A stretch of DNA of 64,000 nucleotides, from positions 37,882,001 to 37,946,000 of the forward strand of contig OZ004608.1 of the NCBI GenBank assembly GCA_963924565.1. Reading direction: 5' to 3'. The DNA is from Ascidiella aspersa (taxonomy: Eukaryota). Within the stretch, counting starts at the first letter, position 1. The number at the start of each line of letters is the position of its first letter. Both the position numbers and the translations under genes were made by a program. The notes below the pieces were generated by a model. The model was not told the origin of the DNA, made no database searches, and worked only from the letters and a program-made list of their open reading frames with translations. Positions 4,087 to 60,300 of the stretch are shown here, piece after piece.

Positions 4087-4620
4087 TTGGCGAAGATAAA
4101 AACAAACCTGATACAGCAGTTCCTGGACCACTTAAACAGCTTGGAACCTAACATTAAATACACAATGGAAACAGAGAACAATTGGTCAATTTCATTCCTG
4201 GACTCATTAATCACTCGTAACCGGTCAGGTAGACGACCTTCCAAGGTGTTTAGAAAAGTAACACATTCAGATCGCTACTTGAATTTCAGATCGGACCACC
4301 CTTTGCACAAACGCTCGGTGGTAAATACCCTACTACCCAGAGACTTTGCCGTAACCATAATGACGAAGTCGACGAAATTAAACATGTTAAAAAGGCCATA
4401 AGAATAAACAGATTCCCCGACTGGTTGTTCAAACTGCAAATCAAAACTAACCACTTAACAGCTAAACCAGAATCTAAAGGTCTGACCATTATTTCTTACA
4501 TTCCAGGTCTGGGAGAAAAAACTAAGACGTATTTTGAAAAGCCACTAAATTTCTACAGCTTTCAAACCGGCCAGAAAAATTGGAAACATTTTACCTTCAC
4601 CTAAAGATCCAGTTAAAACT
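4087..4620 (+). mobile_element. Penelope-like retroelement RT C-terminal/thumb fragment
   Basis: FLDHLNSLEPNIKYTMETE..ISFLD..VFRKVTHSDRYLNFRSDHP, then frameshifted ISYIPGLGEK..FKPARKIGNILPSPKDP, typical of the PLE RT-to-GIY-YIG linker. Confidence 0.85.
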
Positions 4621-5039: not shown

Positions 5040-5900
5040 AACAAAATGAAATTTATTGACCAGATTTGTCGAAAACGGCTCTCTGGACAGATTAGACCGG
5101 CACGAAAAGGACGAGTCCTACAAACGCTAGTCCTACAAACGCTATCTAAAAGTAAAGAGTAAAATTTGACGAGACAACAGGACGCAAGGCGTTATGGAAA
5201 TGAGTCGGCAGTAATTTAACGAACGTGGTGCTTCGGAAAGCGGTTTTGTAACGTCACCGAGTTCGCCAAAATATATGGCGATCAGAATGTTGCATTAGTT
5301 CGTGATTTTCGAGACAAAATTCGGTCTAAATACAAAGAGCAGTCGTGTCGCAGGAGTAAGAAGCTGGGCAAACAAAACAAGAAGCAGGAGGCAGTTGGAA
5401 AATATCTACTTCCTTCTCAAAGGCAACCACTAAAAGTAAGTAATGATCAAAATTTATCTAAAGACAACAAGACGCGGTTATGGAGAAAGTCGTCGGGAAT
5501 TAAACGAACGCGTTGTTTCTGAAATCGGTTTTGTAACGTTGCCGAGTTCGCAAAGTATAGGACGACCAGAATGTTGCATTAGTTCGTGGGTAAAGAAACA
5601 ACACGACCAGACAACAGTTGAAAATATCACCAAGCTTCCTTGAAAGGAATTGAAAAGTTCTAGCCCTAAAAAGCAGAAGAGTACGAGCAACAAAACAAAA
5701 ATGGAGGACAATTGTATTTCCCATTGCCTGTTAGTTGCTCTGAGGAAGCTGTGTTTGTAAAACACCAATCCAGTTTTAACATGAATCAAAACGGTAATAT
5801 GAAATTGTCAAGGGACACACGACTGAGTGATAGAAATGTTGATACAATGATAAACACTATTATGAAACACAATTTTCCAAAATTGGGGGTTTAAAAGCAT
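5040..5900 (+). mobile_element. NOF/Foldback-like Mutator transposase C-terminal fragments (degenerate)
   Basis: DNRTQGVME motif and downstream LSDRNVD segment; paralogous to 11340-11760 and 59830-60300. Confidence 0.5.
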
Positions 5901-6904
5901 TCCTGCATTTAAAATACTTTTTAAAACATAATTAAATATTTCCATAATTCTTGGGAAGTCTAATGAAATTGTGCGACATAGCAGCGAGCCCAACAATGAA
6001 CATGACAGATGAATATATTTCCAAGCACATCAAGACATTCACTACTACAGAGAGGCTTGCTAGATACCTGGAATAGACGTATTAAAGTGAACATAATAAT
6101 CAAAAGTGAAATTAAATGAGAATTTGGAAAGGGATAGAGGAAGACATTTTTGCGGCATGGCAAAAACATTTTCTACAAACAATATTCAGATACAGATACC
6201 GTATTAGAAGTGAATAAAATACTCTAGAAATTGGAAGGGATAGAGGAAGACATAAAAGCGCTGGCTTAGGCACGGCAAAAACTTTTCTGCAAATAATATT
6301 CAGAATCGTATGTTAAAAATCAAAAGAGGGCGGAAAAAACATTTACTAAAGATAACCCTGGAAAGGACCATTCAAAGGGTCTGTTTTAACGCCAAATGAT
6401 TGGAATTTAATTTGTGGTTCTGTTCAAGGACGATATATTAAAAACAAAAACTGGAGCGATATAATCAGAAGATATTTAAAACGATATAACTCCTACTATT
6501 CGCTCGTTTTTACGCACCATCGTTGGAATAAATTGCACAGATCTAACTTGTTTTTTCTTGTTCCCGTTAAGTGTAAATTTAATGCTTGCGATCGTCGTTT
6601 TATAATAAAAAATTACGACAAAACCACCAGGGAGTTTTTCCTCGTATCCTACAGCGATCGAATAAAACATCATGCGGATGACACGTCAGTTTGTTAATAC
6701 ACGGATCCCACAGAGACGCACCAAAGAAAAAATTGAAAAACGTTAACCCACGGCACCGGTCTTCATAACCTTCAAAATGTGTCGATATTGGGGCGTTGAA
6801 AAAATTTACATTTAAGCGGAAGTCCTAGCAAGAAAAACATGAAAGAGTTTGCAGGTGTGGTGAGCAAGCGCAGAAGTAAAGTAATGATGTTGGGTAATTT
6901 ACAG

Positions 6905-7270
6905 TTACAGGAAGCAAGTGAGCTGGAAGGTTCGTTAACCGAGCTCCCGCAAACGGCTCCTTTATGTTTCCGACAGCAATACTCGGAACTTAAGAGCCCT
7001 GCCTTGTAAGGCTTTCGTCAAACTTCGCGTTCGACGCGTGTGGCCTAAAAAGTATTCCGGGTTGTACAACAAGGCATGGTTACACCGAGCTGTCCAACAG
7101 CAGAATACTGGATTGAGTTGCTGTCGTCGTTATTGGCCTTGGCACTAACGACGTAGTCAAACAGCAGCCCGGAGGAAGTATCAGCCTCTCCTTCAAGGTG
7201 AAGTTAAGATCTTGACGGACACAAGAGTGATCCGCCTCACTAAGGCGTTGTACCCTGGATCGAAGGTTGT
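6905..7270 (+). pseudogene. SGNH-hydrolase gene fragment (copy)
   Basis: Nucleotide copy of 8730-9120 (SDSN..IPGCTTRHG..IGLGTNDVV) with frameshifts and a stop. Confidence 0.75.
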
Positions 7271-8516
7271 TATCTGCCATTTCGACTAATCGGCCAATAT
7301 TTGACCTATCATTTGCCCAGGTCTCGCTGTTCGGAAGACTGTGGGACAGGCACGGTGAGAAAAGCTTCATTCAAGCCTGTGGTGGGTAAAGCAAATGTTA
7401 CCCTTCGATAACTGTAAAAACACTTAATAATTTTGAATATTGTAAACCTTCCGCGGGCACCAATGCGCGAAGCACCACCTGTTGCATCAAAGTTGGTATT
7501 TAGTTTTCCCGCAAACGTGGTATGTCTGGGAATAAGTTTGTGTATTTAACAATTCCTAAACCACTGCTTTATGTATTTTCTTGTAGAAGACTGTTTGAGC
7601 ACGGACATTTGCTCCACCGACCAACGGACCGAGGAAAGAGGTATCCATTTCATATCAATTTTCCTCCCATAATCTTGAGGGCACACAAAGCAAAAACACA
7701 TTTCCTAAAGATGAAATTATAAACCATCAACAAAAAGAACAACCCATTATGATCATCAAGTTGACATCAAACTTACTTCTACTGTGAAAATACTAAAAAT
7801 GGTTTCAAATATGAACCAGAAACAAAGAGACGAAACTGAATAAACTACCAATTAAGGCAAGTCTTCTACTATTAAATATACATGCCAAGCAAATATATAA
7901 TAAATCTACTATATTTCTTAACTGCCAGTTTTATTTTTTTTTGCTATGGATTGTTTACCAATCACGTTTTATTACAGCAATATTAGAAAAATGTATCATA
8001 ATGTGGTATCGTGGATATTGGCAAAACGTCACTTGGCAAAAGGAAAAAAAAAAGGTCATACCCCTTTAAGTTACTGATGTATGACAAACTTATTTTATAA
8101 AAATCCCTTTAAAGTCCTTACCATCGGCATCACATCAATACTTGTGACACCCAAGCCAAAGTTCAGCCTTCATAGCGACGGAGGCCGCGCGTGCAACGCA
8201 CAAAACTATTGCAGGTAAAGCCAGTTAATAAACCCGTGTAGAGTTATAAATTTGTCTAATGCTTTGCGGAATTAACACAAAAAGGGTAAAATGTTATTGG
8301 AATTACATATTTAAAATTGCAGGCATCTGGTTTTCAAAGTTGCTTGGCGTTTTCCTGACAAATCTCCGGTATATAAACCAAAAGGTACTTTGTACAAATG
8401 ATCGTTCTGTGGAAGCTACTGAATTTCTCCTTTCAACCAACGAATACACACTTGTTAATTTTGATTAAAAAGATTTGTTTAATTTATCGACATTAATTTT
8501 CTGTCCGAACAAAACA

Positions 8517-9668
8517 ATGGGAGGTGTATTTTTCCGCACGTAGAAACGCAGTCCTAGTTTGGTAACTGTGACCCATTCGCGATTGCGAGTTCCTACTGAG
8601 GAAATACGACTCTCCTGGTCTTCCCGCATATGTTTGTACAGGTAGAGTGTATATAAGTTTGGTTTATTGATTAAAGTAGCATAGTTAGTTGTTTGGAAAC
8701 CTTGTTTAAAGCTCTAGTAAAGCAGTTGCGGGAAGCGAGTGAGCTGGAAGGTTCCTTTACCGAGATCCCACAAACGGATCCTTTATGTTTACGACAGCAA
8801 TGCTCGGAACTTAGTTGAGCCCTGCCTCGTAAGGCCCTCGTTCATGTTCGATGTATGTGCTATCAGTATTCCGGGGGGTACCACCAGGCATGGTATTACC
8901 GAGCTGTCCAACAGCAGGATACTGGATCGAGTTGCTGTCGTCGTTATTGGCCTTGGCACTAACGACGTAGTCAACAGCAGCCCGGAGGAAGCATCAGCCT
9001 CTCCTTCAAGGTATTGTCGAATAGTGTTTTGTTATTGTCTTTTTAGACTTATTTCTAAGATCTTGGAGGACACGAGAAGGCTGATCCGCCTCACTAAGGC
9101 GTTGTACCCAGGATCGAAGGTTGCTATGCCATGTTGTGTGTAGGACACGTTTTCGTTTGAAAACAAATCATTGTAGTCGCGATGCAAAGGCTCTGTTGTT
9201 GTAGTTGTTTATATAAAGCAACTGTCAATGTTTTTTTTTAATGCAAAGTGAATTGTTTGATGCTTGGCGCGTTTTAAAGCGCTGATCTAGAATCCTACCA
9301 ATGTTTTTACTGTGGAAACGAGTTGTCTAATTTAAAATTGCAAGGAAGAAATAAGCATGAAACATAAATATAAATTGCTGTATTTAGATCTTCCACACCG
9401 GGTTACTGCCCCATTTGACTCCACAGGGTTGCGTGGTGGAGCAACTGAACAGGGCATTAAAGGTCAGCGTCGAGGAAGAAGGGGCGGAGTCACTCGGGTT
9501 GGATGTCCCTTTTGCAAACAGGACGTGGGCTGACGGACTCCACCTTTCTCTAAGTGCTCTGTGGAAGTATTTATTAAAGATGGCATAATTACAAACATGT
9601 TGAACAAACCAGACCGCCAACACCCATTGCTGACGCTGACCAACTTCCCCCATCTTCCCACAAAGTTA
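8517..9668 (+). pseudogene. Spliced SGNH/GDSL-hydrolase gene, most complete copy (probable Helentron accessory gene)
   Basis: Block I YDSNARN, block II SIPGG, block III IGLGTND. GT-AG introns at 9011-9046 and 9120-9387. The exon from 9388 reads IFHTGLLP..VEQLNRALKVSVEEEGAE..WADGLHLS (block V DxxH). Early TAG at 8541; a 4-nt deletion gives a stop at 9586. Confidence 0.8.
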
Positions 9669-10004
9669 AGTAATATGTATGTTTAAAATCGATAAACGAC
9701 CAATCGACCAATATTTGATCTGCCATTTGTTTCCCAAATATCTCGCTGTTCGAAAGATTGTGGGACACGCACGGTGAAAAAAGCTTCATTCAAGCCTGTG
9801 GTGGGTAAAGCAAATGTTACCCTTCGATAACTGTCAAAACACTAATAATTTTGAATCTTGTAGACTTTTCCGCGGGAACCAATGCGCGAAGCACCGCTCG
9901 TTGCATCAAAGTTGGTCTTTTTTTTCCGCGAATGTGGTATGTCTGTGAATAAGCTTGTGTATTTATCATTTTCTAAAGCACTGCTTTATGTATTTTCTTG
10001 TATC

Positions 10005-11760
10005 AGACCGTGCCCATTTGCACTTTTTGAATGCCCATTGCACTTTTGAATTTTGTTCTTGTAAAGTTAGCCTCGATTTGTCACCTAATGCCAGTAAAAC
10101 AGTTAAGGTACCACACAGACAATTAAGGAACAGAAAGGGCGATATTGTTGCCTGCAGATTGAAGGGTGATAGAAGAACAGCCATGCAGGAAATTGGCTAA
10201 CATTTTGCCCCGCCGCTTTAACCTAACAATTTAGACAAGACGACCAAGTGGAAGAGTTGGGCAACCACGATAACGCGCCTATTTATAATGTTTCAAGACA
10301 AGCGAGGGCGGAAGTTAATAAAATAAAACTTCCTTCGAGTAAAGAAACCGACGCGATTAAGGCAATGCAAGTTGCACAAGCGGATAACTGTACAGGAAGC
10401 AAGTCCTCGTTGCCAGGGACCATTCGCTTTTTTTTTAAATGTTTTACACTGATGAAAACAAATTAGTTGCAAAACCGCTGTGCATCAAATCATTTGCGAT
10501 GTAAGCATGGCAATTATTCGGTAGCTATTTATACATGAGCCAGGATTTGGAAGCCTATTTAGATCGATGTTTTAGTTTCGTGACAGAAAGAGCAAGGCAG
10601 GAATTAAAATTCAAAAGGCAAGTCAATTTTGGAACATTTACTAGCAATTGCTTGGCGAAAATTGCTGGCCAAGCAACAAATACAATAAAGGACACAATTG
10701 TAATTGCATGTAAGTTGCTAGAGACGACGATGTTGTGGTGTAAAATATCAACTTCGTTTTACCCTAAGGGTTTTAATAAGCAAACTGGAGAATGGAAGTC
10801 TCTCTGCCTTCGTGATTACAGACCAACTAAACAGTGAGTTGGATACAAGCCACAACTATTTATAATGTTTTAAGACAAGGGTGAAGGTTATTAAAATACA
10901 ACTTCTTCCTTTTAGTAATGAAAACAGCGCGATTAAGGCAATGCAGGATGCGCAGGATAGAAACGTAGTTAAAACAAATCCGCGCTGGCAGGAGCCATTT
11001 GCTTTTATTAAAGCATTCCAAGTGGCCTTATGCTTTCTTTAAGACACGTTTAGGAATTTTTCATGAAAGAACACGAACCTACATTATGTTCATTAATGCC
11101 ACCGCGGAGGTATTACTGAAACTTCAGAGAGCAAACCGTAGTATTACGCGTATGAAATCTCTGTGCGTCACCTGGAATAATGTAAAACCTTTTGCCTTTG
11201 CAACTTTAAATTTGTTTTTACCGCACATCGGGGATCATGTTAACAAACCTCTAAGGCAAATAGCAATATTAACTGAGAAGGTTAACAGAGAAAAAAATAA
11301 TAAAAAATCGTGTCGTACAAACGCTACCTAAAAGTAAAGAGTAAAACAATTCACCGAGAGACAACAGGACGCAAGGGTTATGGAAAAGAATCGGCAGGAG
11401 TTTAGGCGAAGGCGGGGCTTCGGAAAGCGGTTTTGTAAAGTTACAGAGTTCGCGAAAGTATATGGCGATCAGAATGTTGCATTAGTTCGTGAGTTTGGAG
11501 ACAACATTCAGTCTAAATAATACAAAGAGCAGTCTTATCCCAGCAGGAGTAAAGCTGGGTAAACAAAACAAGAAGCAGGAGACAGTTGGAAAATATATCC
11601 TTCCTTCTCAAAGGCAACCACTAAAAGTAAGTAAAGATCAAAATTTATCTAAAGACAACAAGACGCGGTTATGGGGAAAGTCGGCGGGAATTAAACGAAC
11701 GCGTTGTTTCTGAAATCGGTTTTGTAACGTTGACAACCATAATAAAGCACTAGTTCGTGG
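10005..11760 (+). mobile_element. NOF/Foldback-like Mutator transposase, fragmented copy
   Basis: NAHCTFEFCSC..RLKGDRR, PGTIRF, QIICDVSMAII, YLDRCF, MFINAT, RTQG segments separated by deletions. Confidence 0.65.
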
Positions 11761-12969
11761 GTAAAGAAATAACAGGACAATATATCCAAGCTTACTTCAA
11801 AGGAGTTCAAAAAAAGCGAGCCCTAAAAAGCAGAAAAGTGTACGAGCAACAAAACAAAAAAGCACTCCTGAATTTGAAATACATTTAAAACATAATTAAG
11901 TATTTCCATAAATTCATGGAAGTCAATAAAATTGGGCGGCATTGCAACGCTTCCAACAATGAACATGACAGATGAATATATTTCCAAGCACATCAAGACA
12001 TTCACTACTACAGAGAGGCTGGCTAGATACCTGGAATAGACGTATTAAAGTGAATAAAATACTCAGAAGTGAAATTGAATGAGAATTTGGAAAGGGATAG
12101 AGGAAGACAATAAAAGCGCTGTCTTGGGCACGGCAAAAACATTTTCTACAAACAATATTCAGAATCGTATGTAAAAACCAAGAGGCCGGAACAATGACCG
12201 CAAGCAGGGAATCCTGGGAAAACCCAGCAGAGGTAAAAAAACTAGACACGGTCTCCACCGACCAACGGACCGAAGAAAGAGTGTTTTGCAAAACTATTGG
12301 TTGTCAAAGTAGGTGTGCTGAATCATCTAACTATATTTTCTTGTATAAGACCGTTGAGCATGTACTACTTCGACCAGTGGGCCGGAAGAAAGTGACACAC
12401 ACCCCTGCGATAAATGGTAAGTGTTTTTGCAAATATTTTTTCCAATCATCACCTTAATTTTACCAACGTATTCACTTTTTGCAGCCTATGAAACGACTTT
12501 ATGGCGGGGCCCGTATGGTAGATCAACAGGATGATAAAATTAAATGAAAAAGAGCGCGCGATTGAATCTTTTAATTTTGATCGTTCGTGTGGTGCTAGCT
12601 GGGTCACTTTATTAGGCAAATTGAAGAACGAAAAATGTTAAAGAAATAAATTAGGTATGAAGTTCGTATTCTTAAGAATTTTGTTGCGCAACATGCTAAC
12701 GAGTTTAAAATTCGAGGCAAGGAGACATTTGTCAGTTCAATGTGATAAAAAAACTAGTGATGTGTTTTGTGAAGAAAATTGTGGTAGTAGCAGCGGTGCT
12801 TCGGATGTTGAAATTAGTGAGGATGAGATTTGTAGTGAACCAATGTTGTGTGATAGTCCAGTTGGTTAAATGTTGTCATGGGACAAAGATGAGCCAGATC
12901 TGTCAAAAAATATAAGTTGCGAATTTTCGGACTCCTGACAGTAAGACATCGCGACAACATACATTTGAT

Positions 12970-14060
12970 TCCACTAAAACAATCTGTAGTTGGTCGACGT
13001 TTCACTAATAAAAATTGGTGTTGCGTGTTTCGTCAACCGTACAAAAACCGTAACCCTTTCTGTAGTTTTTGGTTCAAGACATTTCTGGAATCATGAAAAT
13101 AGTAAAACTCGTGCTTTTCATCGTGATGCCCATTGTACTTTTGAAATTCCCACTTGTTAGCATCGATTTGTCACCTAATGCCAGTAAAACATTTAAGGTA
13201 TTACACAGGCAAGGCACAGAAAGGGCGATATTGTTGCTTGCAGATTGAAGGGTGATAGAAGAAAAGAAATGTATGAAAAGTTGGCTAACATTTTGCCTCG
13301 CCGCCTTAACCTAAACAATTTAGACAAGTTAGACGACCAAGTGGAAGAGTTGGGCAACAACGATAACGCGCCTATTTATAATGTTTTAAGACAAACGAGG
13401 GCGGAAGTTAAAATAAAACTTCCTTCGAGTAAAGAAACCGACGCGATTAAGGCAATGCAAGTTGTACAGGCGGATAAATGTACAGGAAGCAAGTCCTCGT
13501 TGCCAGGGACCATTCGCTTTCATTCTAAGTAGCCTTATGGTTTGGTCGTTCGATACTTTACGCATTTTTTACGAAAGAACTAAAACAGATATTATGTACA
13601 TCGACGCCACAGGAGGTATTATTAAAGCTTCAGAGAATAAGGCGCAGTATTACGCGTATGAAATCTTTGTGCGTCACCCGGCCAAGGAAGCGAGCAGTCA
13701 TAACATCAGTCACAACAACATCGTTTCCATTTCGAATTTTTTTTTAAATGTTTTACACGGATGAAAACAAATTAGTTGGAAAACCTCTGTGCATCAAATC
13801 ATTTGCGATGTAAGCATGGCAATTATTCGGTAGGTATTGTCAGTGTACATGAGCCAGGATTCGGAAGCCTATTTAGATCGATGTTTTAGTTTAGGGACAG
13901 GAAAAGCAACTAATTCAGCAAGCTATTTGTTCATTGTGTGGTAGCAACACTAGGAATAAGAAAACGTGGTCTTGTTCTTTAGACAAGAAACTATATTTGT
14001 AATGGTTTGTGGACTCTAATAGCAACATCCTATATCACATGGTAATCTTATTTAGCAAAA
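12970..14060 (+). mobile_element. NOF/Foldback-like Mutator transposase, fragmented copy
   Basis: NPFCSFWF, RLKGDRRK, DIMYIDATGGII..YYAYEIFVRHP..SHNIVSISNF, QIICDVSMAII. The YIDATG and CDxS motifs carry the first two catalytic Asp of MULE-type DDE enzymes. Confidence 0.75.
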
Positions 14061-15179
14061 AAAAAATAAATGTCAGCGTTGAGGAAGAAGGGGTGGAGTT
14101 TCTCAGGTTGGAAGGCCCTTTTGTGAACGGGAAATATCTTACTCTAACCGATAGCAGATTTAAATTCAGGCAAAAAAGTAGTTTGCTATTTTAACAGAGA
14201 CATACAAGGAATTGGTATCTAACAAGGTGCTCAGATTGGGACATCGCACTTTTGCAGGAATCCATGAGAGCCCCAAAAACTACCAGAAAGAAGAACTATG
14301 ACAGGGAGTGGGCTGCAACATCAACATGCGATGATACAACATCAGGCAATAGAAAAGACTACAACCCACAATAATATATTCCACTAACAACTACTATATG
14401 AAGAAAGCGTCAGTCAAACTGACCTTTCTAGTGGCTTGGTTTTACAACATATTAAGCAAATAAGACTGGTTAAAATTTAAGGTATACGCAAAGGTGAAAT
14501 GTGTGCATTCCTTAACGTCAGACAAAGAGTTATGTTATAAAAACTTTAATAAACCTAAATATATCACAATGTGGTAAAGTTAAGTATATGCTTGGAAGGA
14601 AATATTTATTAAACACTTGTTTTATAAAAAATCCCTTTTAAGCACTTACCATCGGCATGGCACCAACACTTTGCTTTATTATTTACTAATCAATTTATAT
14701 TTTCAGTTATTCACCTTACCCCAAACACCGAAGGCAAAGTTCAACCTTAATGGCGACGGAGGCCGCGCGTGCAACGCACAAAAACTCGTGTCGGCAAATG
14801 TTGTTTTATTATAGTTTCTTTGAGGAAGTGCGAGTGGCAATCACTGATAAAAGTATTGGGAAATGCATGTAGTTGACTTTGTACCTGCAGGTATCTGCGT
14901 TTTCTTTCGAAAAAAAAACAGTTACGCAGCGTTGAAGCAACCTGGCTTGAATGTCTTTTTAAGTTTGCATTTTCCCGGTTTTAATAACATGGTTTTGCAT
15001 TTTATTTGAATTAAGACATGAATTCACTTGTGTAAGCCTTTGTGTTATTAACTAATTCCCGTACACCGGTGTTATTTTTTTAGTAAGGGTTTCCGCAAAA
15101 TGTTTGGAATGATGAGGTTATCTAGGTTTTGCGACAAAGATGAATATTAATTATCTTTTGTGGTTGAAAACAATGTTTG

Positions 15180-15410
15180 CTCTTCGGACAGCAATGCCCG
15201 GAACTTAGTTGAGCCCTGCCTTGTAACGTCTCGCCCAAACTTTTGCGTTCCATGTATGCGCCGTCAGTATTCCGGATTGTACAACAAGACATGGTATCAC
15301 CGAGCTGCCTAACAGCAGAATACTGGATGGAGTTGCTGCCGTCGTTATGCCAGGGAGCTTTCCAGCATTATACGTGGGAGCTAAAATAATGAATCTTTTA
15401 TGTTACTTGT
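15180..15410 (+). pseudogene. SGNH exon fragment (copy), duplicated at 16071-16270
   Basis: DSNARNLVEPCLV..SIPDCTTRHGITEL; same 3' junction (ATGCCAGGGAGCTTTCCAGC) as the 16071-16270 copy. Confidence 0.75.
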
Positions 15411-15425
15411 CACCAATTTAATTAT

Positions 15426-16070
15426 TGTAGCCCCTTTGTGCGGAATGAATGCCGCGGGAACTGCCGTCCAGGTCGGCTACCCGTCGCCACAGTTTCCCCT
15501 CGGGGATAGAAATTTGTGTGAATTTCGCAGCCTAAGTTTTCCCAGCGCTGCGTGATATCTTTGTGTGCGATTTCGTTTTGAATTGCGTTGTGTTGCATCG
15601 TCATTCGTCGGGTGGATACCGAGAGAATCGGATGCATTTTGAGCACAGTTTGCAATCTCGTTGGTTAGAGACAAGCTGTAGCCTTATGCGAGCACTTGGT
15701 GTGCATGGTTATTTGCCGTATACTGATTGTCGTTCTGTCCAATAAACGTCTTGCTCGAGAAAGTAAAGTCATTCCTATCCTTGGCAGCTACTTTGGGGAT
15801 TGTGTCCCAATCTAGTCTGCGACAATTGCGGGCTCGTCCGGGAATTTAAACAAGGTTTGACTAAAGAGACCTCTTCAAGACGTAGTAGAAATGGACAAGA
15901 TAATCGAGGCAGGAAAAGCATGGGACTTCCAGGTAATGACCTGGTGAAGTTCGTGCAGGATCAGCAGCAGCTGCAGATGAGAAATCCATAAAAGCAGCGG
16001 CAGCCGCCGAAGAATAGCGGGCCGCCAGAGAAGCTCCGAGAGAAAACGAGTTTCGGTTAGAAATGAATCG
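15426..16070 (+). mobile_element. Gypsy-like LTR (15426-15824), PBS-Pro (15827-15843) and 5' gag stub (from 15891)
   Basis: TGTAGC...GCGACA ends; internal AATAAA; TGCGGGCTCGTCCGGGA closely resembles the tRNA-Pro PBS TGGGGGCTCGTCCGGGA; gag-like MDKIIEAGK/MGLPGNDLVKFVQDQQQ. Confidence 0.75.
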
Positions 16071-17089
16071 GTTGAGCCCTGCCTTGTAAGGTCTCGCCCA
16101 AACTTTGCGTTCGATGTATGCGCCGTCAGTATTCCGGGTTGTACAACAAGGCATGGTAACACCGAGCTGTCTAACAGCAGAATACTAGATGGAGTTGCTG
16201 CCGTCGTTATGCCAGGGAGCTTTCCAGCATTATACGTGGGAGCTAAAATAATGAATCTTTTTTGTTATTTTACATTTGATCTTGAAGCCTTACGAAGAGA
16301 TTGTATCCAGGAGGTCACTTTTAAGTGGAGGTCACGTTTTGGTTGTGAAACTAATCATTGTAATTTGTTGAGCTTCATTGAAGGGCGAAGTTCCTCTGGT
16401 TGACAACAACGGAGTTTTCCTTGTTGGGACCCCTGACACCTTGCTCTATGAACCAGAAGGCCAAGCACTTAAAGGTAACGCTTTTTTGTAGTTTTGCGTT
16501 CGAAGACATTGCTGGAATCATAAAAATAACAAAACTCTTGCTTTTCACCGGAATGCCCATTGCACTTTTCGAAAATAAAGGGCGATATTGTTGCCTGTAG
16601 ATTGAAGGCCAATAAGAAAAGAAATGCTTGAAAAGTTGGATAATGTTGTAGGAGTCCGGCAATAGGGATAACGCAGTTACTTGCAATGGATCCTGGTCGG
16701 CTCACGCAGAGCATGCCGTTGAACTTCGACACTGAATGTATTGTCGACCGGAAACCGCAGCATGATGGGACGTCTAATCTATTTCGTTAATTATTTGTTT
16801 TATACAAAGTGCAATGTTCATGCGAATCGTTTTATATCGGCGAAAGCAAACGAGTAGTGTACAAAAACTAACAGCTGTGGGTACAAGATGTCTTGCGCTA
16901 GATATTCTACAAGTAAAAAAAAAACAGGTCAAGTGGTTCATACCACTAGTAAAAACCTGAATGTGTGTTTACTGGACACGGTAATGTCGGTGCTGCCCAA
17001 ACAATTTTCGCAGGAATGTTTTTTTTAATAAATATGCTGTTGGTACCAGGCATAGGTACAGCGCCGTTACCACTCCACTTAGATGTTGT

Positions 17090-18859: not shown

Positions 18860-20100
18860 TTTGACGCCATTTATATCGACGCAACCGGTAGCACTTAACC
18901 ATGAGATAGCGAGATAAGTCTTACTAAAGATAGAACGCGCTTCGACGCCGCTTATATTAATGCCACTGGTTGTATGTTAGAAACCAACAATTCGAAACCG
19001 TTTTATGTTTATGAAAAGATAAATGTACAGAAAACAAATCCGCGTTCCCACGGACCATTCGCTTTTATTAAAGCATTCAAAGTAGCCTGTGCATTGGTCT
19101 CGACACGTTACGAATTTTTCGTGAAAGAACACGAACCGACATTATCTACATGTAAAACGCCCTATTACGCATATGAAATCTCTGTGCGTCATCCGGCAAA
19201 AGGTAAACACACCATAGTCTTTGGAAGCCTATTTAGATAGATGTTTTAGTTTGGTAACCTATGTAGTCATGTTGCTAAAAGGGAAGAGATTATGTATGCA
19301 ATGGGTTGGTGGACTAATTGAAGAACATTCTATATAAAATGGTAATCTTATTTACCATAAAAAATGACATTCAGGTGAAAATATGCTGGACAAGTGCAAA
19401 TTGAGCGTGAGCGAAATCAGAATATTTCAAAACAATTTGTTCTTTCTGAAAGGGATTCAGGAGAGAGTAAACTTGGAACTTGACAAAATCGCCACCATGT
19501 CAACAAAACCATTTGTTAAATATCTTGACACTATTAGCAGAGCAAGACGGGCATAAAAATGCATAAAGCATGTGGACAAAATGAATTTTATTATCTGGAT
19601 TTTTTTGTAAAATTTACGAGCAATTGCTTGCCGAAAATTGCTCACCGAGGAACAAAGCAATATAAAAGGGTCACAATTGTAATTGCGATTTGCCTGTAAG
19701 TTGCCAGGGATGCAGTTGTTGTAAATATAAAATATCGACCCAGTTTTAACACAGATCAAACTGATCATATGGAATTATTGTCAAAAGACACATGGCTAAG
19801 CGACAGGCATATATATTGTTACATGATGAATGTTATGGCAGCACAATTTCAAATTGGGAAGTTTTGTTAATGCCTTTCAAACACCGTTCAATTCACAGGC
19901 AAATCATCTGGTAAGTTTATTCAAATATTAAATGCCAATTCAAATCATTGGGTTACAGCCTCGATATTTTTTTCAACAAAGTTAAATGTAATACAGATTT
20001 ACGACAGTCGTTACCACCACTTAAAAGATGTTCAAGATGTCAAAACTGGTGTACTTACACAACAAAACACAAATATATCAAGTTTGAATTTCCCAAGGTG
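18860..20100 (+). mobile_element. NOF-like Mutator transposase fragments followed by an Ulp1/SENP-like protease fragment
   Basis: DAIYIDATGS, AAYINATG, YYAYEISVRHPAKG, EAYLDRCF; then DTWLSDRHI..FIQILNANSNHWVTAS..IQIYDSRY (Ulp1-like His/Asp motifs). Confidence 0.65.
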
Positions 20101-20142
20101 GACAAGTAGAAGGGAAATTATAATTTCCTTAAATAAGACATC

Positions 20143-54829: not shown

Positions 54830-55690
54830 AAGAGGACCCAGAGCTGCACGAAATGGCGGCATCCTTGCAAATGCATAGCAAGCGGCATACCGCTTCTTGT
54901 AGAAAGGGTGGGAAAGTTTACGGGTAAGCATCCAAAAACTTAAAAATGTTATGTATGATTTACTTTGTTTAGACTTAACTTCCCTCGTCCCGTCAGTTTA
55001 AAAACCTTTATTTGCATCACGCGCTGAAAAAACAGATAAAAACGAAATACATTAAGTCAAGGGAAGATCTGTTGGCGGTCCGCAATGCGTTGGATGCATA
55101 CGAAAGTCTATGCAACAACAGTTTGCAACTTCTGGGTGATATATTATAGGTTAAGTTGATATAGTTGAAGTGTTATTAAAATAGCTATTTTTGTAAATAT
55201 ACTTCTACAAGACAGGTGTCGCATTTTGTGATTTTCTTAATGCCATGAATAGTTTTGGCCAAAAAGGAAACCGTTATTTTGGAACCTGAACCAGACGAAT
55301 GTTGAGTGAACGCATACAACCAAGAGCTGTTCCGAGCGTGGAATGCAAATATGGGATATTCTGTACATCCGGGAAGTGAACATTATGGAAGCTGCGTATC
55401 GAGGTGTAAAAAATTACAGGAGGGCGTTTTGAATGAATGATGCGAGTAAAAAAGTAGTTTACGAGCAAGTTCATGATGCTCATCGCCTTGCTCGATATGC
55501 CGTGTGAGGGTGTACCTGCTTCAATACCTAGTAAATGTAAATGCTGAACTATTCCTTGCGCTTGTATGGTCGCGAAAGCAACGTCACTGCTCAGAAAAAA
55601 CTAGAGGCGAAGAGTAGATTGCGCCAGTTTTCGCGAAGATGTAAACCAATAATATATTTACTTGAAAGGGTACCGACCTCCAGCAAAGCA
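54830..55690 (+). mobile_element. Helentron (Helitron2) Rep-domain fragment with spliceosomal introns
   Basis: EDPELHEMAASLQMHSKRHTASCRKGGKV, intron 54924-54972, LNFPRPVSLKTFI, then KKETVILEPEPDEC*VNAYNQELFRAWNANM(D)ILYI. These match the Helentron Rep motifs QxHxxxHxxSCxK..CRFNFP and VNxYNxxLLxAWNANMDIQY. Confidence 0.8.
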
Positions 55691-55692
55691 GT

Positions 55693-56285
55693 ATGGTAGA
55701 GGCAATTGCGGGAAGCAAGTTAACTGGTAAGCTCCTGTACCGAGCTCCCGCAAACGGCTCCTCTGTTTCCGACTGCAATGCTCGGAACTTAGTTGAGCCC
55801 TGCCTCGTAAGACCCTCGTTCATGTTCGATGTATGTGCTATCAGTATTCCCAGGGGTACCACCAGGCATGGTATTACCGAGCTGTCCAACAGCAGGATAC
55901 TGGATGGAGAAGCTGCCGCCGTTATTGGCACTAACGACGTGGTGGTCAACATCAGCCCGGAGGAAGCAGCGGCCTCTCCTTCAAGGTATTGTTGAATAGT
56001 GTTTTATCTTCCAAACCGGGTTACTGCCCCAGTTGACTCCACAGGGTTGGGTGGTGACTAGACATGGCCTAAAAGGTCAGCGTCGAGGGAGGAGGGTCGG
56101 AGTTCCTCGGGTTGGAGGACCCTTTTGCAAACGGGGCGTGGGCTGACGGACTCCACCTTGTTCTAAGTGCCCTCCCGGAAGTATTTATTAAAGATGGCAT
56201 AATTACAAACATGTTTAACAAACCAGACCGCCAACACCCATTGCTGACGCTGACCAACTTCCCCCATCTTCCCACAAAGTTAAGT
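55693..56285 (+). pseudogene. SGNH-hydrolase gene copy directly downstream of the Helentron Rep fragment
   Basis: SDCNARNLVEPCLVRP..IGTNDVV..SPSR then gt; followed by GLLP..PFANGAWADGLHL. Confidence 0.75.
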
Positions 56286-57731
56286 AATATGTATGTTTAA
56301 AATCGGATAAACGACCAATATTTGACCTATCATTTGTTTTCCAGATATCTCGCTGTTAGATTGTGGGACACGCACGGTGAAAAAAGGTCATTCAAGCCTG
56401 TGGTGGGTAAAGCAAATGTTACCCTTCGATAATGCATCAAAGTTGGTCTTTGGTTTTCCCGCGAAAGTGGTATGTCTGTGAATAAGCTTGTGTATTTATC
56501 ATTTTCTAAACACTGCTTTATGTATATTCTTGAAGAAGACCGTTGGAGCACGGGCTTGTGCTCCTTCGACTAGCGGGACGAAGAAAGTGACACCCACCCC
56601 TGTGGTAAATGTTTTAGCAGAAGAAAAACCTTCGATAACTGTAAAAAAATAATGATTTTGAATTTTATAGACATTTCCAGGGCACCAAGGAATGAAACAT
56701 CGTCCGTTGTATCAAAGTTGGTCTTTGGTTTTCCCGCGAATGTGGTATGTCTGTGAATATGCTTGTGTATTTATCATTTTCTAAACACTGCTTTATGTAT
56801 TTTCTTGCAGAAGACCGTTGGAGCACGGACATTTGCTTCACCGACCAACGGACCGAGGAAAGAGGTATCCATTTTATATCAATTTTCGTCCCCTAATCTT
56901 GAGGGCACACAAAGATGAAATTATAAACCATCAACAAAAAGGACAACCCATTATGATCATCAAGTTGACATCAAACTTACTTCTAACTATGGAGATACTA
57001 AAAATGGTTTCAACCATGAACCCGAAACAAAGAGACGAAACTGAATAAACCGCCAATTAAGACAAGTCTTCTACTATTAAATATACATGCCAAGCAAATA
57101 TATAATAAATCTACTATATTTCTTAACTGCAAATTTTAATTTTTTTGCTATGGATTGTTTACCAATCACGTTTTATTACACCAATATTAGAAAATGTATC
57201 ATAATGTGGTATCTTGGATATTGGCAAAACGTCACTTGGCAAAAGGAAAGAAAAAAGGTCATACCCCTTTAAGTTACTGATGTATGAAAAACTTATTTTA
57301 TAAAAATCCCTTGTAAGTCCTTACCATCGGCATCACATCAATGCTTGTTATTCACCTTACCCCAAACACTCAACCAAAGTTCAGCCTTCATAGCGACGGA
57401 GGCCGCGCGTGCAACGCACAAAACTCTTGCCGGTGAAGCCAGTTAATAAACCCGTGTAGAGTTATAAATTTGTCTAATGCTTTGCAGAATTAACACAAAA
57501 AGGGTAAACTGTTATTGGAATTCCATATTTAATATTGCAGGCATCTGGTTTTCAAAGTTGCTTGGCGTTTTCCTCTGACAAATCTCCGGTATGTAAACCA
57601 AAAGGTACTTTGTACAATCATTCTGTGGAAGCTACTGAATTTCTCCTTTCAACCAACGAATACAGACTTGTTAATTTTGATTAAAAGATATGTTTAATTT
57701 ACCGACATTAATTTTCTGTCCGAACAAAACA

Positions 57732-58682
57732 ATGGGAGGTGTATTTTTCCGCACGTAGAAACGCAGTCCTAGTTTGGTAACTGTGACCCATTCGCGATTG
57801 CGAGTTCCTACTGAGGAAATACGACTCTCCTGGTCTTCCCGCATATGTTTGTACAGGTAGAGGGTATCTAAGTTTGGTTCATTGATTAAAGTAGCATAGT
57901 TAGTTGTTTGGAAACCTTGTTTAAAGCTCTAGTAAAGCAGTTGCGGGAAGCAAGTGAGCTGGGAGGTTCCTTTACCGAGCTCCCACAAACGGATCCTTTA
58001 TGTTTACGACAGCAATGCTCGGAACTTGGTTTAGCCCTGCCTCGTAAGGCTTTCGCCGAACTTCAGGTTCGATGTATGCGCCGTCAGTATTCCGGGGGTA
58101 CCACCCGGCATGGTATTACCGAGATGTCCAACATCAGAATGCTAGATGGAGTTGCTGTCGTCGTTATTGGCCTTTGCACTAACGACGTAGTCAACAGCAG
58201 CCCGGAGGAAGCATCAGCCTCTCCTTCAAGGTATTGACGAGTAGTGTTTTTTATTGTCTTTTTAGACTTATTTCTAAGATCTTGGAGGACACAAGAACGC
58301 TGATTCGCCTCACTACCCTGGATCGAAGGTTGCTATATGCCATTTTGTATGTGGGACACGTTTTGGTTTGAAAACAAATCATTGTAAATTGCTGAATTTA
58401 GATCTTTCACACCGGGTTACTGCCCCAGTTGACTCCACAGGGTTGCGTGGTGACTAAACATGGCCTAAAAGGTCAGCGTCGAGGAAGAAGGGTCGGAGTT
58501 CCTGGGGTTGGAGGTCCCTTTTGCAAACGGGACGTGGGCCGAGGGACTCCGCCATTCTCTAAGTGCTCTGCGGAAGTATTTATTAAAGATGGAGGGCATA
58601 ATTACAAACAAGTTGAACAAACCAGACCGCCAACCCCCATTGCTGACGCTGGCCAACTTCTCCCATCTTCCCACAACGAAGG
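57732..58682 (+). pseudogene. Spliced SGNH-hydrolase gene copy
   Basis: Same ATG and in-frame TAG (57756) as 8517/8541. Keeps KMEGIITNKLNKPDRQPPLL..PTTK then gtaagt, a frame disrupted in the left copy. Confidence 0.75.
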
Positions 58683-59024
58683 TAAGTAAATATGTATGTT
58701 TAAAATCGATAAACGACTAATCGACCAATATTTGAGCTATCATTTGGTTCCGAAATATCTCGCTGTTCGAAAGATTGTGGGACACGCACGGTGTAAAAAG
58801 CTTCATTCAAGCCTGTGTGAGTAAAGCAAATGTTTCCCTTCGATAACTGTAAAAACACTAATAATTTTGAATATTGTAGACCTTCCGCGGCCACCAAGGA
58901 GCGAAGCACCACCCGTTGCATCAAAGTTGGTCTTTAGTTTTCCCGCAAATGTGGTATGTCTGTGAATAAGCTTGTGTTTTTATTATTTTCTAAAACACTG
59001 CTTTATGTATTTCCTTGTAGAAGA

Positions 59025-60300
59025 CCGTGCCCATTTGCACTTTTGAATTTTGTTCTGCCAGTAAAACAGTTAAGGTACCACACAGACAATGTAAGGAACA
59101 AGGGCGATATTGTTGCCTGCAGATTGAAGGGTGATAGAAGAACAGCCATGCAGGAAATTGGCTAACATTTTGCCTCGCCGCTTTAACCTAAACAATTTAG
59201 ACAGACAAGTTAGACGACCAAGTGGAAGAGTTGGGCAAATGTTTTAAAAGACAAGCGAGGGCGGAAGTTAATAAAATAAAACTTTTGCATGTAAGTTCGA
59301 TGTTGTCGTTTTACCCTAAGGGTTTTAATAAGCAAACCGGAGGATGGAAGTCTCTCTGCCTTCGTGATTACAGACCAACTAAACAGAGAGTTGGATAATA
59401 AAAGGGTGAAGGTTATTAAAATACAACTTCCTTTTAGTAATGAAAACGGCGCGATTAAGGCACTGCAGGATGCGCAGGCACAGAAACGTAGTTAAAACAA
59501 ATCCGCGCTGGCAGGAACCATTTGCTTTTATTAAAGCATTCCACGTGGCCTTAATCTTTTTTTCGCTAAGACACGTTTACGAATTTTTCATGTAAGAACA
59601 CGAACCTACATTATGTTCATTAATGCCACCGCGGAGATATTACTAAAACTTCAGCGAGCAAATCGTAGTATCACGCGTATGAAATCTCTGTGCGTCATCT
59701 GGAAAAAATGTAAAACCTTTTGCCTTTGCAACTTTAATTTGTTTTTACCGCACCATGTTAACAAACCCGTAAGGCAAATAGCAATATTAACTGAGAAGGT
59801 CAACAGAGAAAATAATTAAAAAATCTGTCTTTGGACAGCTTGTTGCTAGGTGATTTGGGCCGACACAGAAAGGACGAGTCGAGTAAAAGTCATCGAAAGA
59901 CAAAAGGACGCAAGGCGTTATGTAGAAGAGTCGACAGGAGTTTAAGCGAACGCGGTGCTCCGGAAAACGGTTTTGTAACGTTGCCGAGTTCGCCAAAGTA
60001 TACGGCGATCAGAATGTTGCACTAGTTCGTGAGTTTGGAGACAAGATTCAGTCTAAATAAAAAGAGCAGTCGTATCGCAGGAGTAAGAAGCTGGGCAAAC
60101 AAACCAAGAGACAGTTGGAAAATATCTCCTTCCTTCTCAAAGGCAACCACTAAAAGTAAGTGAAAACCACAATTTATCGAAAGACAACAAGACGCGGTTA
60201 TGGAGAAAGATTGGGCAATAATTAAAAGAACGAGTTGTTGCTGAGCTGAGTGATAGAAATGTTGATACAATGATGAACATTATGCAACACATTTTGCCAA
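59025..60300 (+). mobile_element. NOF-like Mutator transposase fragments
   Basis: RLKGDRR, MFINAT, LLLGDLGRH and RTQGVM segments. Confidence 0.6.

What the first reader, a model, noticed from the sequence alone, without database searches (positions are those of the whole stretch)
8517..9900. Intron-containing SGNH-hydrolase gene amplified as transposon cargo
Seen: a complete SGNH fold (DS, PG, GTND, DGLH) split by GT-AG introns and followed by further small exons. The main exon occurs at least 6 times (6.9, 8.7, 15.2, 16.1, 55.7, 57.9 kb), with last-exon pieces at 14.1 and 62.5 kb, always on + and interleaved with transposase fragments. LINE ORF1 esterases are intronless, so a LINE origin is unlikely. 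From memory the motif spacing resembles SGNH accessory genes of fish Helentrons; this needs checking. Inference: an enzyme-carrying mobile element not obviously described in this lineage.
Basis: partly seen in the sequence, partly recalled or inferred. Interest (0 to 1): 0.75.

Follow-up and report, generated by a model that had tools for sequence, protein, structure and literature searches.

The report
Relics of esterase-carrying Mutator-like transposon
The repeated esterase-like gene pieces in this window are decayed, rearranged leftovers of a jumping gene whose intact copies elsewhere in the genome start their own transposase gene with an intron-split esterase domain, an unusual combination seen so far mainly in sea-squirt genomes.

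Summary
The window has an SGNH/GDSL-type exon set (8726-9588, GT-AG introns 9011-9046 and 9120-9387), at least six main-exon copies, and interleaved transposase fragments, all on the + strand.

These are broken relics. The 8.7-kb copy is 5'-truncated and frameshifted. The 5-17 kb and 55-64 kb blocks are one segmental duplication, and no element termini are present.

Intact relatives elsewhere in the genome are 11-12 kb DNA transposons with:
- 9-bp target-site duplications;
- kilobase-long inverted terminal repeats built of ~345-bp tandem repeats (Foldback-like);
- on one strand, four SGNH exons followed by a 1271-aa ORF: DDE core, Ulp1-like protease, PHD finger.

The DDE core looks Mutator/Rehavkus-like. 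Its best structural match is an IS256-family transposase (Z 12.8). Pfam's MULE model does not match it.

The SGNH module, with all four catalytic blocks, lies upstream of the transposase in three families whose transposases are only 24-47% identical. Its dN/dS is 0.24. In one family a 65-nt GT-AG intron would join it in frame to the transposase. Ciona and Styela gene models show such fusions.

It is therefore probably the element's own N-terminal domain, not cargo. No Helitron link was found. RNA evidence was too thin to confirm splicing. An earlier agent of this scan reached the same reading on other DNA of this genome.

The parts
6902..7583 (+). Older relic copy: SGNH main exon plus exon 3 (6902-7281), then the small downstream exons region (7283-7583)
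   Evidence: 78% and 88% identity to 8723-9132 and 9697-10000; 89% to element B positions 4229-4516.
8726..9010 (+). SGNH main exon (blocks I-III: YDSN, IPGG, GTND). It is 5'-truncated relative to intact copies, and stop codons lie just upstream.
9011..9046 (+). Intron 1 (36 nt, GT..AG; 68 nt in intact copies)
9047..9119 (+). SGNH exon 3 (73 nt; LISKILEDTRRLIRLTKALYPGSK)
9120..9387 (+). Intron 2 (268 nt, GT..AG). Its position is shared by all three element families.
9388..9588 (+). SGNH exon 4 with block V (WADGLHLS). A 4-nt deletion causes a premature TAA at 9586-9588.
9697..9935 (+). Small downstream exons that in intact copies lead on towards the transposase ORF. They are conserved in subfamily C (L030).
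10028..11773 (+). Scrambled transposase fragments (about aa 416-688, 485-606 and 841-938 of the 1271-aa ORF)
   Evidence: blastn and tblastn
12326..14062 (+). Transposase N-terminal to middle part (about aa 2-753) with stops. It includes the DATG motif seen in ORF 13462-13764.
14067..14132 (+). Piece of SGNH exon 4
   Evidence: 83% to 9458-9523
15183..16210 (+). Two fragments of the SGNH main exon (15183-15348 and 16070-16210)
19018..20125 (+). Transposase fragment (about aa 536-1153, including the start of the Ulp1-like part)
5083..5888 (+). Transposase fragments (about aa 855-1063)
55674..56432 (+). SGNH relic lacking exon 3 and both introns' interior (8722-9030 joined to 9388-9830)
57617..59017 (+). 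Duplicate of the 8.4-10.0 kb copy (90-93% identity) with frameshifts (1-nt and 5-nt deletions)
59076..62433 (+). Duplicate block of scrambled transposase fragments (collinear with 10.0-14.0 kb)
62588..62651 (+). Piece of SGNH exon 4

Best explanation
The window holds non-functional relics of a family of cut-and-paste DNA transposons of the Mutator kind. The relics are truncated, frameshifted, scrambled and then copied by one segmental duplication. The family is Rehavkus-like and Foldback-like in build.

Intact members elsewhere in the genome are 11-12 kb long. They make 9-bp target-site duplications and end in 0.7-3 kb inverted repeats built of ~345-bp tandem repeats.

They carry one transcription unit. 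Four short exons encode a catalytically complete SGNH (GDSL_2-type, acetyl-esterase-like) domain. Small linker exons follow, then a long exon encoding a DDE transposase core, a Ulp1/C48-like cysteine protease and a C-terminal PHD finger.

Shown:
- element structure and TSDs;
- recent activity;
- co-linearity of SGNH and transposase in three deeply diverged families;
- purifying selection on SGNH;
- conserved catalytic blocks;
- GT-AG introns whose removal keeps the frame.

Inferred:
- The SGNH exons are spliced to the transposase exon, so the esterase is the N-terminal domain of the transposase protein.
- The domain is an active short-chain esterase that helps the element. One possibility is lipid or membrane handling, as proposed for LINE ORF1p esterases. 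Another is removal of an acetyl-type mark alongside the deSUMOylase-like and chromatin-reading domains.
- It is not needed in cis for DNA cleavage.
For: Repeats and genome copies. The genome has at least 66 DNA matches on seven contigs.

Element ends. Eight dispersed copies were fetched, and the 8 share TIRs built of 345-346-bp repeats. TSDs were examined in 7 copies: 9 bp in 5, 8 bp in 1, none in 1.

Transposase ORF. Two copies carry a near-identical open 1271-aa ORF, and two more carry ORFs of 1227-1228 aa. The PHD finger is found by Pfam. Peptidase_C48 is above cut-off in homologues P0001 and P0027.

Superfamily:
- All ten best ESM-Atlas named clusters are MULE, scores 0.90-0.94.
- Foldseek's top hit is the ISCth4 (IS256-family) transposase.
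- VIA-align gives Z 12.8, rmsd 4.9 A over 256 residues, against Z 8.6 for the next hit, the P element.
- Alignment A1 has invariant D183, D256 and E497.

SGNH:
- Blocks I, II, III and V are present in the focal, 'd' and 'giant' families.
- Homologues P0011 and P0005 pass the Lipase_GDSL_2 cut-off.
- The P0011 model has pLDDT 89. It matches PAF-AH Ib alpha, sialate O-acetylesterases and CE3 acetyl esterases at probability 1.0.

Linkage. SGNH lies 0.2-2.5 kb upstream on the same strand as transposases that are 47% and 24-27% identical to the focal one.

Selection. dN/dS is 0.24 between subfamilies A and B (15 synonymous and 12 non-synonymous changes, 231 codons). The SGNH region is 93% identical where the TIRs are 67%.

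One gene:
- All exon ends are in compatible phase.
- In C7d a 65-nt GT..AG intron would join exon 4 in frame to the 1322-aa ORF, which leaves no room for separate gene signals.
- Subfamily C has lost exons 1-3. It keeps an in-frame ATG inside exon 4, the same donor site and the linker exons ahead of an open 1228-aa ORF.
- NCBI models fuse SGNH to the transposase N-terminus (Styela P0006) or to Ulp1-PHD (Ciona P0004).
Against: - No RNA proof of splicing. One RNA-seq run gave 18 reads out of 7.8 million records read, with no joints. Thirteen of the 18 fitted only partly and seem to come from diverged copies.
- Pfam's MULE model does not hit the element.
- hhalign of the transposase alignment against one canonical MULE ORF of this genome is not significant, E 0.41.
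- The transposase model has a mean pLDDT of only 61.
- Subfamily C (L030, the copy sequenced across the junction; a second locus, L031, shares 98-99% identical TIR repeats) keeps an open 1228-aa transposase ORF without SGNH blocks I-III. The domain is therefore dispensable in cis.
- C3d has an open transposase ORF but a broken exon 4.
- Fish homologues of the transposase show no SGNH in their gene models.
- Most SGNH-bearing copies are deletion derivatives without a transposase. By my reading, only 5 of the 22 strongest SGNH hits outside the C2 37.0-37.95 Mb cluster have a transposase hit within 5 kb downstream.
Confidence: 0.8

Rival explanations
1. The SGNH gene is a captured host gene carried passively as a separate gene (Pack-MULE-like cargo, or like texim with fish Helitrons), with its own promoter and terminator.
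For: - MULEs are known to capture genes (passages of PMC6431247).
- texim SGNH genes travel with Helitrons in fish (PMC4021074: abstract and sections 6-7).
- In subfamily B, about 2 kb of 571-bp tandem repeats separates SGNH exon 4 from the transposase ORF.
- One lineage has lost the SGNH part and keeps an open transposase ORF.
Against: - The module is retained with intact catalytic blocks in three families whose transposases are 24-47% identical. That implies ancient, continuous association.
- In C7d only a 65-nt in-frame intron separates the two.
- Exon phases are all compatible.
- Tunicate gene models fuse the two.
- The whole-library search found no ordinary host family. There were 17 hits in 1.84 billion representatives, and the named ones are mostly tunicate 'uncharacterized' proteins.
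Confidence: 0.12
2. The window copies are a host gene cluster: domesticated SGNH genes expanded by tandem duplication and still functional.
For: - All copies share one orientation.
- The 8.7-kb copy keeps all four blocks and both introns.
- dN/dS between the two window paralogues is 0.52, below 1.
Against: - The 8.7-kb copy lacks the N-terminal 19 codons of the main exon and the first exon. It has stop codons upstream and a frameshift stop after block V.
- The 57.9-kb copy has 1-nt and 5-nt deletions, and the 55.7-kb copy lacks exon 3.
- Other copies are 66-160-nt fragments.
- They are interleaved with stop-riddled transposase pieces.
Confidence: 0.04
3. The SGNH gene is an accessory gene of a Helentron/Helitron or the ORF1 esterase of a LINE.
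For: - Fish texim-Helitron is a precedent (PMC4021074).
- A weak hit (E 1e-4) goes to a fish protein with triplicated SGNH units, P0019.
- A first-reader note next door proposed a Helentron-like family (s1-805346).
Against: - None of 19 Helitron_like_N matches lies in the window. The nearest on this contig are at 35.32-35.33 Mb, about 2.5 Mb away, and none lies beside a fetched element.
- The elements have TIRs and 9-bp TSDs, which Helitrons and LINEs do not make.
- Intact elements contain no RT or Rep/helicase ORF.
- The gene has introns.
Confidence: 0.02

Closest known systems
Rehavkus / Mutator-like (MULE) DNA transposons
   Same: - 9-bp TSD.
- Long TIRs.
- One long transposase ORF with a PHD finger.
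- Minisatellite arrays inside the element.
Rehavkus features are taken from passages of PMC6446971.

The best structural neighbour is an IS256-family transposase. From recalled knowledge, the IS256 family is the bacterial kin of Mutator.
   Different: - An SGNH esterase module and a Ulp1-like protease are part of the gene.
- Pfam MULE does not match.
- The hosts appear to be tunicate-like (plus fish for the transposase), whereas Rehavkus is described from insects and annelids.
- Homology to Rehavkus proteins could not be tested: Repbase and the paper's supplements were not available.
Foldback elements with Mutator-type transposases (e.g. Tm1 of root-knot nematodes)
   Same: Kilobase-long inverted termini made of tandem repeats. 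Tm1 was seen only in a search listing (PMC3169594).
   Different: No esterase domain is mentioned in the abstract opening shown in the listing, the only part seen. Sequence relationship was not tested.
texim SGNH genes associated with Helitrons in teleost fish
   Same: An intron-containing SGNH hydrolase gene is physically linked to, and multiplied with, a DNA transposon. Its role in transposition is unknown (PMC4021074: abstract, sections 6-7).
   Different: - The carrier there is a rolling-circle Helitron, with texim lying upstream of the Helitron coding region (which sits about 3 kb downstream of texim or in its last intron). Here the carrier is a DDE cut-and-paste element and the SGNH exons appear to be part of the transposase gene.
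- Direct sequence comparison with texim was not done.
Esterase (SGNH) domain of ORF1p in CR1/L2-type LINEs
   Same: A transposable element encodes a PAF-AH-like SGNH esterase as part of its own protein. This is recalled knowledge; PMC4021074 section 6 mentions the relationship to CR1.
   Different: Those are retrotransposons, intronless, in a separate ORF1 ahead of an RT. Here there is no RT, there are introns, and the partner is a DDE transposase.
Zisupton DNA transposons
   Same: A large transposase with a C-terminal Ulp1/SUMO-protease-like domain, present in fish. The domain content is recalled; the original paper is not held.
   Different: - Zisupton makes 8-bp TSDs (passage of PMC12730594). 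Here 5 of 7 copies show 9 bp.
- There is no KDZ-type Pfam match.
- The feature and fold searches point to MULE/IS256 instead.

Membership tests
SGNH/GDSL hydrolase | Four conserved blocks: catalytic Ser (block I), Gly (II), Asn in GxND (III), Asp-x-x-His (V) | tested here: met
   - Window: YDSN, IPGG, GTND, DGLH.
- Intact copies: SDSN, IPGG, GTND, DKLH.
- 'd' family: SDSN, IPGG, GTND, DEIH.
- Giant family: TDSN, IPGG, GTND, DDVH/DRVH.

SGNH/GDSL hydrolase | Significant match to a curated family model | tested here: inconclusive
   Single exons of the window and element score below the cut-off: 19.8 and 12.3 bits against 32.9. Full-length homologues P0011 (41.6) and P0005 (41.7) pass. The joined exon model was deliberately not built.
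SGNH/GDSL hydrolase | SGNH alpha/beta/alpha fold | tested here: met
   Tested on homologue P0011 only: pLDDT 89.1, and 198 PDB matches at E<=0.001. The top matches are SGNH esterases (PAF-AH Ib alpha, sialate O-acetylesterase, CE3).
SGNH/GDSL hydrolase | Esterase activity | not testable with these tools
   Needs enzyme assays.
Mutator/MULE superfamily | TSD of about 9 bp (8-11) and TIRs | tested here: met
   Of 7 copies examined, 5 have 9 bp, 1 has 8 bp and 1 has none. The TIRs of a single element are 96.7-99.3% identical to each other (the outermost pairs of C8a, C3b and C8b).
Mutator/MULE superfamily | Match to the MULE transposase domain (PF10551) or significant profile similarity | tested here: not met
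   - hmmscan gives no hit at E<=1.
- None of 21 genome-wide PF10551 matches lies at an element.
- hhalign against one canonical MULE ORF gives E 0.41, although the second Asp aligns.
Mutator/MULE superfamily | RNase-H-like DDE core most similar to Mutator/IS256-type transposases | tested here: met
   - ISCth4 is top in Foldseek (probability 0.99, E 1.2e-3) and in VIA-align (Z 12.8 against 8.6 for the next hit).
- The ESM Atlas top ten are all MULE clusters.
- D183, D256 and E497 are invariant.
- Model confidence is moderate (core pLDDT 65-91).
Rehavkus group | 9-bp TSD, PHD finger in the transposase, minisatellite inside the element | tested here: met
   The feature list comes from PMC6446971 passages.
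Rehavkus group | Sequence homology to Rehavkus transposases | not testable with these tools
Helitron/Helentron | Rep-helicase ORF in the same unit; no TSD or TIR | tested here: not met
   no Helitron_like_N in the window or beside the elements. TSDs and TIRs are present.
LINE ORF1 esterase | Intronless ORF1 followed by an RT-encoding ORF2 | tested here: not met
   Introns are present. Intact elements have no other long ORF than the transposase, and Pfam finds no RT in it.
Zisupton | 8-bp TSD | tested here: not met
   8 bp in 1 of 7 copies, 9 bp in 5 of 7. The criterion comes from PMC12730594.

The most novel reading that the evidence does not exclude
A catalytically intact SGNH acetyl-esterase-like domain is a translated N-terminal domain of a DDE (Mutator/Rehavkus-like) transposase that also carries a deSUMOylase-like protease and a PHD finger. 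This four-part protein has been kept for a long time across at least three deeply diverged element families in tunicate-type genomes.

That would make it the first esterase-fused cut-and-paste transposase. It would also be a third independent marriage of SGNH esterases with mobile elements, after LINE ORF1p and fish Helitron-texim. The pattern would imply that esterase activity gives transposons of quite different mechanisms a general advantage.
Probability: 0.55. Interest if true: 0.7.

Novelty: new variant of a known kind. Interest (0 to 1): 0.55.

Why it matters
Esterase domains in LINE ORF1 proteins and the SGNH gene that travels with fish Helitrons have no agreed function. A third, unrelated class of element that keeps the same kind of enzyme under purifying selection argues that the activity itself helps transposons.

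This system is also tractable. The element is young, with copies 97-99% identical and open ORFs. A natural 'minus-esterase' lineage exists for comparison.

The transposase family has homologues in teleost fish as well. This bears on the open question, raised in PMC6446971, of whether Mutator-type elements exist in vertebrates.

For annotation, it warns that these SGNH 'genes' in tunicate-type genomes are transposon parts, not host lipases.

Tried and rejected
RNA evidence. The one RNA run offered (X4) gave 18 reads and no joints. Four reads had a loose end at L025:1068. I checked it against the stored loci and found no exact match. By eye it resembles the element's own sequence at that point, so it looks like a diverged copy rather than a splice.

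Pfam. The window ORFs around the SGNH copies gave only sub-threshold hits. PDB sequence search with the 1271-aa ORF found only PHD fingers.

Homology searches:
- The first homology search of the transposase found 3 proteins. The profile search found 8 and did not reach named MULEs.
- hhalign against one canonical MULE ORF was not significant.

Readings considered and rejected:
- Zisupton was considered because of the Ulp1 domain and the fish homologues. I rejected it on TSD length and on the MULE/IS256 signals.
- The Helentron lead was rejected.

Literature. The searches were 'SGNH'+'transposase'+'transposon' (22 papers, 15 listed), 'GDSL'+'Mutator-like' (6), six MULE/SGNH terms with at least two required (1,308 held, 15 listed, none of those with SGNH), and 'esterase'+'transposase'+'ascidian' (7). 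None showed a description of an SGNH-Mutator fusion. Repbase Reports and subscription journals are not covered, and supplements were closed.

Not done:
- The spliced SGNH model was searched exon by exon only. The joined protein was not built, searched or folded. A natural full-length homologue (P0011) was folded instead.
- No consensus of copies was built.
- No direct comparison with texim or LINE ORF1 esterase sequences was made.
- TSDs of the C7 copy were not examined.
- The C7:21315782 copy was fetched only across its left TIR, so loss of SGNH there is not confirmed.
Full report
**Observation.** Frame 1 of 8700-9012 gives ...KRILYVYDSNARNLVEPCLVRPSFMFDVCAISIPGGTTRHGITELSNSRILDRVAVVVIGLGTNDVV.... 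9047-9119 gives LISKILEDTRRLIRLTKALYPGSK. 9388-9588 gives IFHTGLLPHLTPQG...WADGLHLSLSAL.... The boundaries 9010|GT...AG|9047 and 9119|GT...AG|9388 are exact.

blastn of 8401-10000 against the window finds further copies:
- 6902-7583;
- 14067-14132;
- 15187-15348;
- 16071-16210;
- 55702-56532;
- 57617-59017;
- 62588-62651.

All are on the + strand, with E from 2.6e-8 to 0. The 5-17 kb and 55-64 kb blocks are collinear direct repeats 48.3-49.2 kb apart, so they are one segmental duplication.

**Where the family lives.** The window is C2:37,882,001-37,946,000 of a 308.6-Mb eukaryotic assembly. A DNA search gives at least 66 matches on seven contigs. I fetched eight dispersed copies as 20-kb contexts.

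They are bounded elements. In the C6 copy the repeat runs from 7009 to 16692. It has inverted termini of about 1.75 kb, each made of units repeating every 345-346 bp. In 7 copies examined, the flanks show a 9-bp target-site duplication in 5, 8 bp in 1 and none in 1. The termini begin ACCAGAAGCTAC... or ACCAAAAGCTAG....

Subfamily A (C6, C1, C3a, C4) copies are 97-99% identical to each other. The TIR pairs within single subfamily-B elements examined (C8a, C3b, C8b) are 96.7-99.3% identical. The family was therefore active recently.

**Coding content.** Subfamily B copies (C8a 11.9 kb, C3b 11.2 kb) carry the following on one strand:
- a 42-nt exon starting with ATG;
- SGNH exons of 347, 73 and 294 nt, separated by GT..AG introns of 85, 68 and 82 nt;
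- 571-bp tandem repeats;
- an open frame of 1271 codons.

The exon lengths (42, 347+73=420, 294) keep the frame only if the introns are removed. Exon 4 ends in phase 0 at a GTGAG donor.

The 1271-codon frame has no early ATG. It opens with an apparent 23-codon mini-exon, a 69-nt GT..AG intron and then PTKRIYGG....

The ORF contains a DDE-like core (DATG..., CDGS...), an HW...D...C Ulp1-like part and a PHD finger (Pfam PF00628, E 1.7e-5). Peptidase_C48 passes its cut-off in homologues P0001 and P0027.

Subfamily A (9.7 kb) keeps the SGNH exons, but its transposase frame runs into the right TIR after 616 codons. It is a non-autonomous derivative. Several other SGNH-bearing copies have lost the transposase altogether.

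**Which superfamily.** Evidence against a MULE assignment:
- Pfam's MULE model does not match.
- hhalign against one canonical MULE ORF of this genome is not significant (E 0.41).

Evidence for it:
- The TSDs are 9 bp.
- The ten best named ESM-Atlas clusters are all MULE (0.90-0.94).
- An AlphaFold model of the core (mean pLDDT 61, core 65-91) matches the IS256-family ISCth4 transposase best. Foldseek gives probability 0.99. VIA-align gives Z 12.8, rmsd 4.9 A over 256 residues, against Z 8.6 for the P element and about 8 for integrases and Hermes.

IS256 is the bacterial kin of eukaryotic Mutator (recalled knowledge).

The trio of 9-bp TSD, PHD finger and internal minisatellite is what passages of PMC6446971 give for Rehavkus, a Mutator-related group. 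Zisupton was considered because of its Ulp1 domain, but it makes 8-bp TSDs (PMC12730594 passage). I file the element as Mutator/Rehavkus-like with Foldback-type ends. Sequence-level membership remains unproven.

**Is the SGNH part cargo or core?** Several results point to core.

(i) Between subfamilies A and B the SGNH region is 93% identical, the TIRs 67% and other internal DNA 72-83%. dN/dS over 231 codons is 0.24.

(ii) Two further families in this genome have the same layout.
- The 'd' family has a transposase 47% identical and SGNH 46-48% identical. Its ORFs are 1322 and 1264 aa.
- The 'giant' family has a core 24-27% identical and ORFs of 2613-2917 aa.
- Both have SGNH exons 0.2-2.5 kb upstream on the same strand. 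C7d and all three giant copies retain all four catalytic blocks. C3d retains blocks I-III, with its exon 4 broken.
- The intron after the 'YPxxK' position is shared by all three families, and other intron positions differ.

(iii) In C7d, exon 4 ends ...APTLM|GTATGT. Sixty-five bases later...TTACAG| opens the 1322-codon frame in the same phase. This leaves no room for a second promoter.

(iv) In subfamily C, the TIR repeats run straight into the remnant of exon 4. An in-frame ATG, the DGLH block, the same donor and the linker exons are kept ahead of an open 1228-aa ORF. Exon 4 therefore belongs to the transposase transcription unit. It also means SGNH blocks I-III are dispensable in cis.

(v) Outside this genome the main exon finds only 17 representatives among 1.84 billion. 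Of the ten looked up, five are Styela clava, one is Ciona intestinalis, one is a fish (Nibea) and three are unnamed. Styela P0006 joins SGNH to the transposase N-terminus. Ciona P0004 joins SGNH to Ulp1-PHD.

**What kind of enzyme.** Homologues P0011 and P0005 pass Pfam Lipase_GDSL_2. A model of P0011 (pLDDT 89.1) is an SGNH fold. It is closest to PAF acetylhydrolase Ib alpha, sialate O-acetylesterases and CE3 acetyl esterases. The family keeps DSN, PGG, GTND and DxxH throughout. I infer an active short-chain esterase. Its substrate and its role in transposition are unknown.

**RNA.** One RNA-seq run of the same species label gave 18 reads on a 6-kb stretch covering the SGNH exons and the transposase. 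No joints were seen. Most reads lie in the orientation expected for sense transcription in a typical stranded library. Thirteen of the 18 fit only partly. This neither confirms nor refutes splicing.

**The window itself.** Mapping the intact element onto the window shows only internal pieces and no TIR sequence:
- SGNH fragments at 6.9, 8.7, 15.2, 16.1, 55.7 and 57.9 kb;
- transposase fragments at 5.1-5.9, 10.0-11.8, 12.3-14.1, 19.0-20.1 and 59.1-62.4 kb.

The 8.7-kb copy begins inside exon 2 and has a 4-nt deletion and a premature stop after block V. The 57.9-kb copy has frameshifts. The 55.7-kb copy lacks exon 3. Similar fragments crowd C2:37.0-37.3 Mb on the opposite strand.

None of the 19 Helitron_like_N matches lies in the window or next to a fetched element. 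The recalled fish case is real: the texim SGNH genes associated with Helitrons (PMC4021074, abstract and sections 6-7). It involves a different carrier.

**Literature and earlier notes.** My literature searches showed no description of an SGNH-Mutator fusion. Repbase Reports, subscription journals and supplements were out of reach. An earlier follow-up of this scan on another piece of this genome (s1-801569) reached the same reading. It is not independent evidence.

**Method note.** The spliced model was handled exon by exon, and the joined step was left out.

Noticed in passing
window 16-2293 (+): A 134-aa ORF and an overlapping 632-aa ORF (…FHWTNSQATIHPF…GKGPCDGLGGTVKR…) have no Pfam match at a useful level. 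They look like another transposon-type protein. An earlier first-reader note (s1-805324) touches the start of this region.
   Followed up: no
window about 31.8-36.3 kb and 42.5-47.3 kb (-): Two sets of minus-strand ORFs have BTB/BACK- and Kelch-like wording in their translations. They are probably a tandem pair of BTB-Kelch genes lying between the two duplicated relic blocks. The identification is from reading translations only.
   Followed up: no
window 33994-34788: Overlapping ORFs on both strands encode GAGAGA/PAPAPE-type low-complexity repeats, which indicates a microsatellite-like stretch.
   Followed up: no
L030 (C8:12357000-12359499) and L031 (C7:21318700-21321199): A third subfamily has an open 1227-1228-aa transposase ORF. 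In the C8 copy, SGNH exons 1-3 are replaced by TIR repeats running directly into an exon-4 remnant that starts with an ATG. This is a natural 'esterase-less' variant. The C7 copy was seen only across its TIR.
   Followed up: partly
L019-L024 (C6:918000-933999, C8:25927000-25942999, C8:2486000-2501999): 'Giant' relatives have single open frames of 2613-2917 codons, preceded by three SGNH exons. They contain PHD fingers in mid-protein (Pfam; two matched stretches in the C6 copy, one in the C8g copy) and long proline/charge-rich repeats.
   Followed up: partly
P0027 (Betta splendens), P0028 (Knipowitschia caucasica): Teleost proteins share 30-33% identity with the transposase core over 94-98% of its length. 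The Betta protein (P0027) also has Ulp1 and PHD domains; Pfam finds no domain in P0028. They show no SGNH in the gene models. This is relevant to whether Mutator-type elements occur in vertebrates.
   Followed up: partly
G000 C2:37.0-37.3 Mb (outside the window): Dense arrays of SGNH and transposase fragments of the same family lie here on the minus strand. With the window's plus-strand arrays, this suggests a megabase-scale graveyard or cluster of this element on one chromosome arm.
   Followed up: no
L018/C3d about 10000-10100: The C3 copy of the 'd' family has an open 1264-aa transposase frame. Its SGNH exon 4 lacks the DxxH block and runs into a stop.
   Followed up: partly
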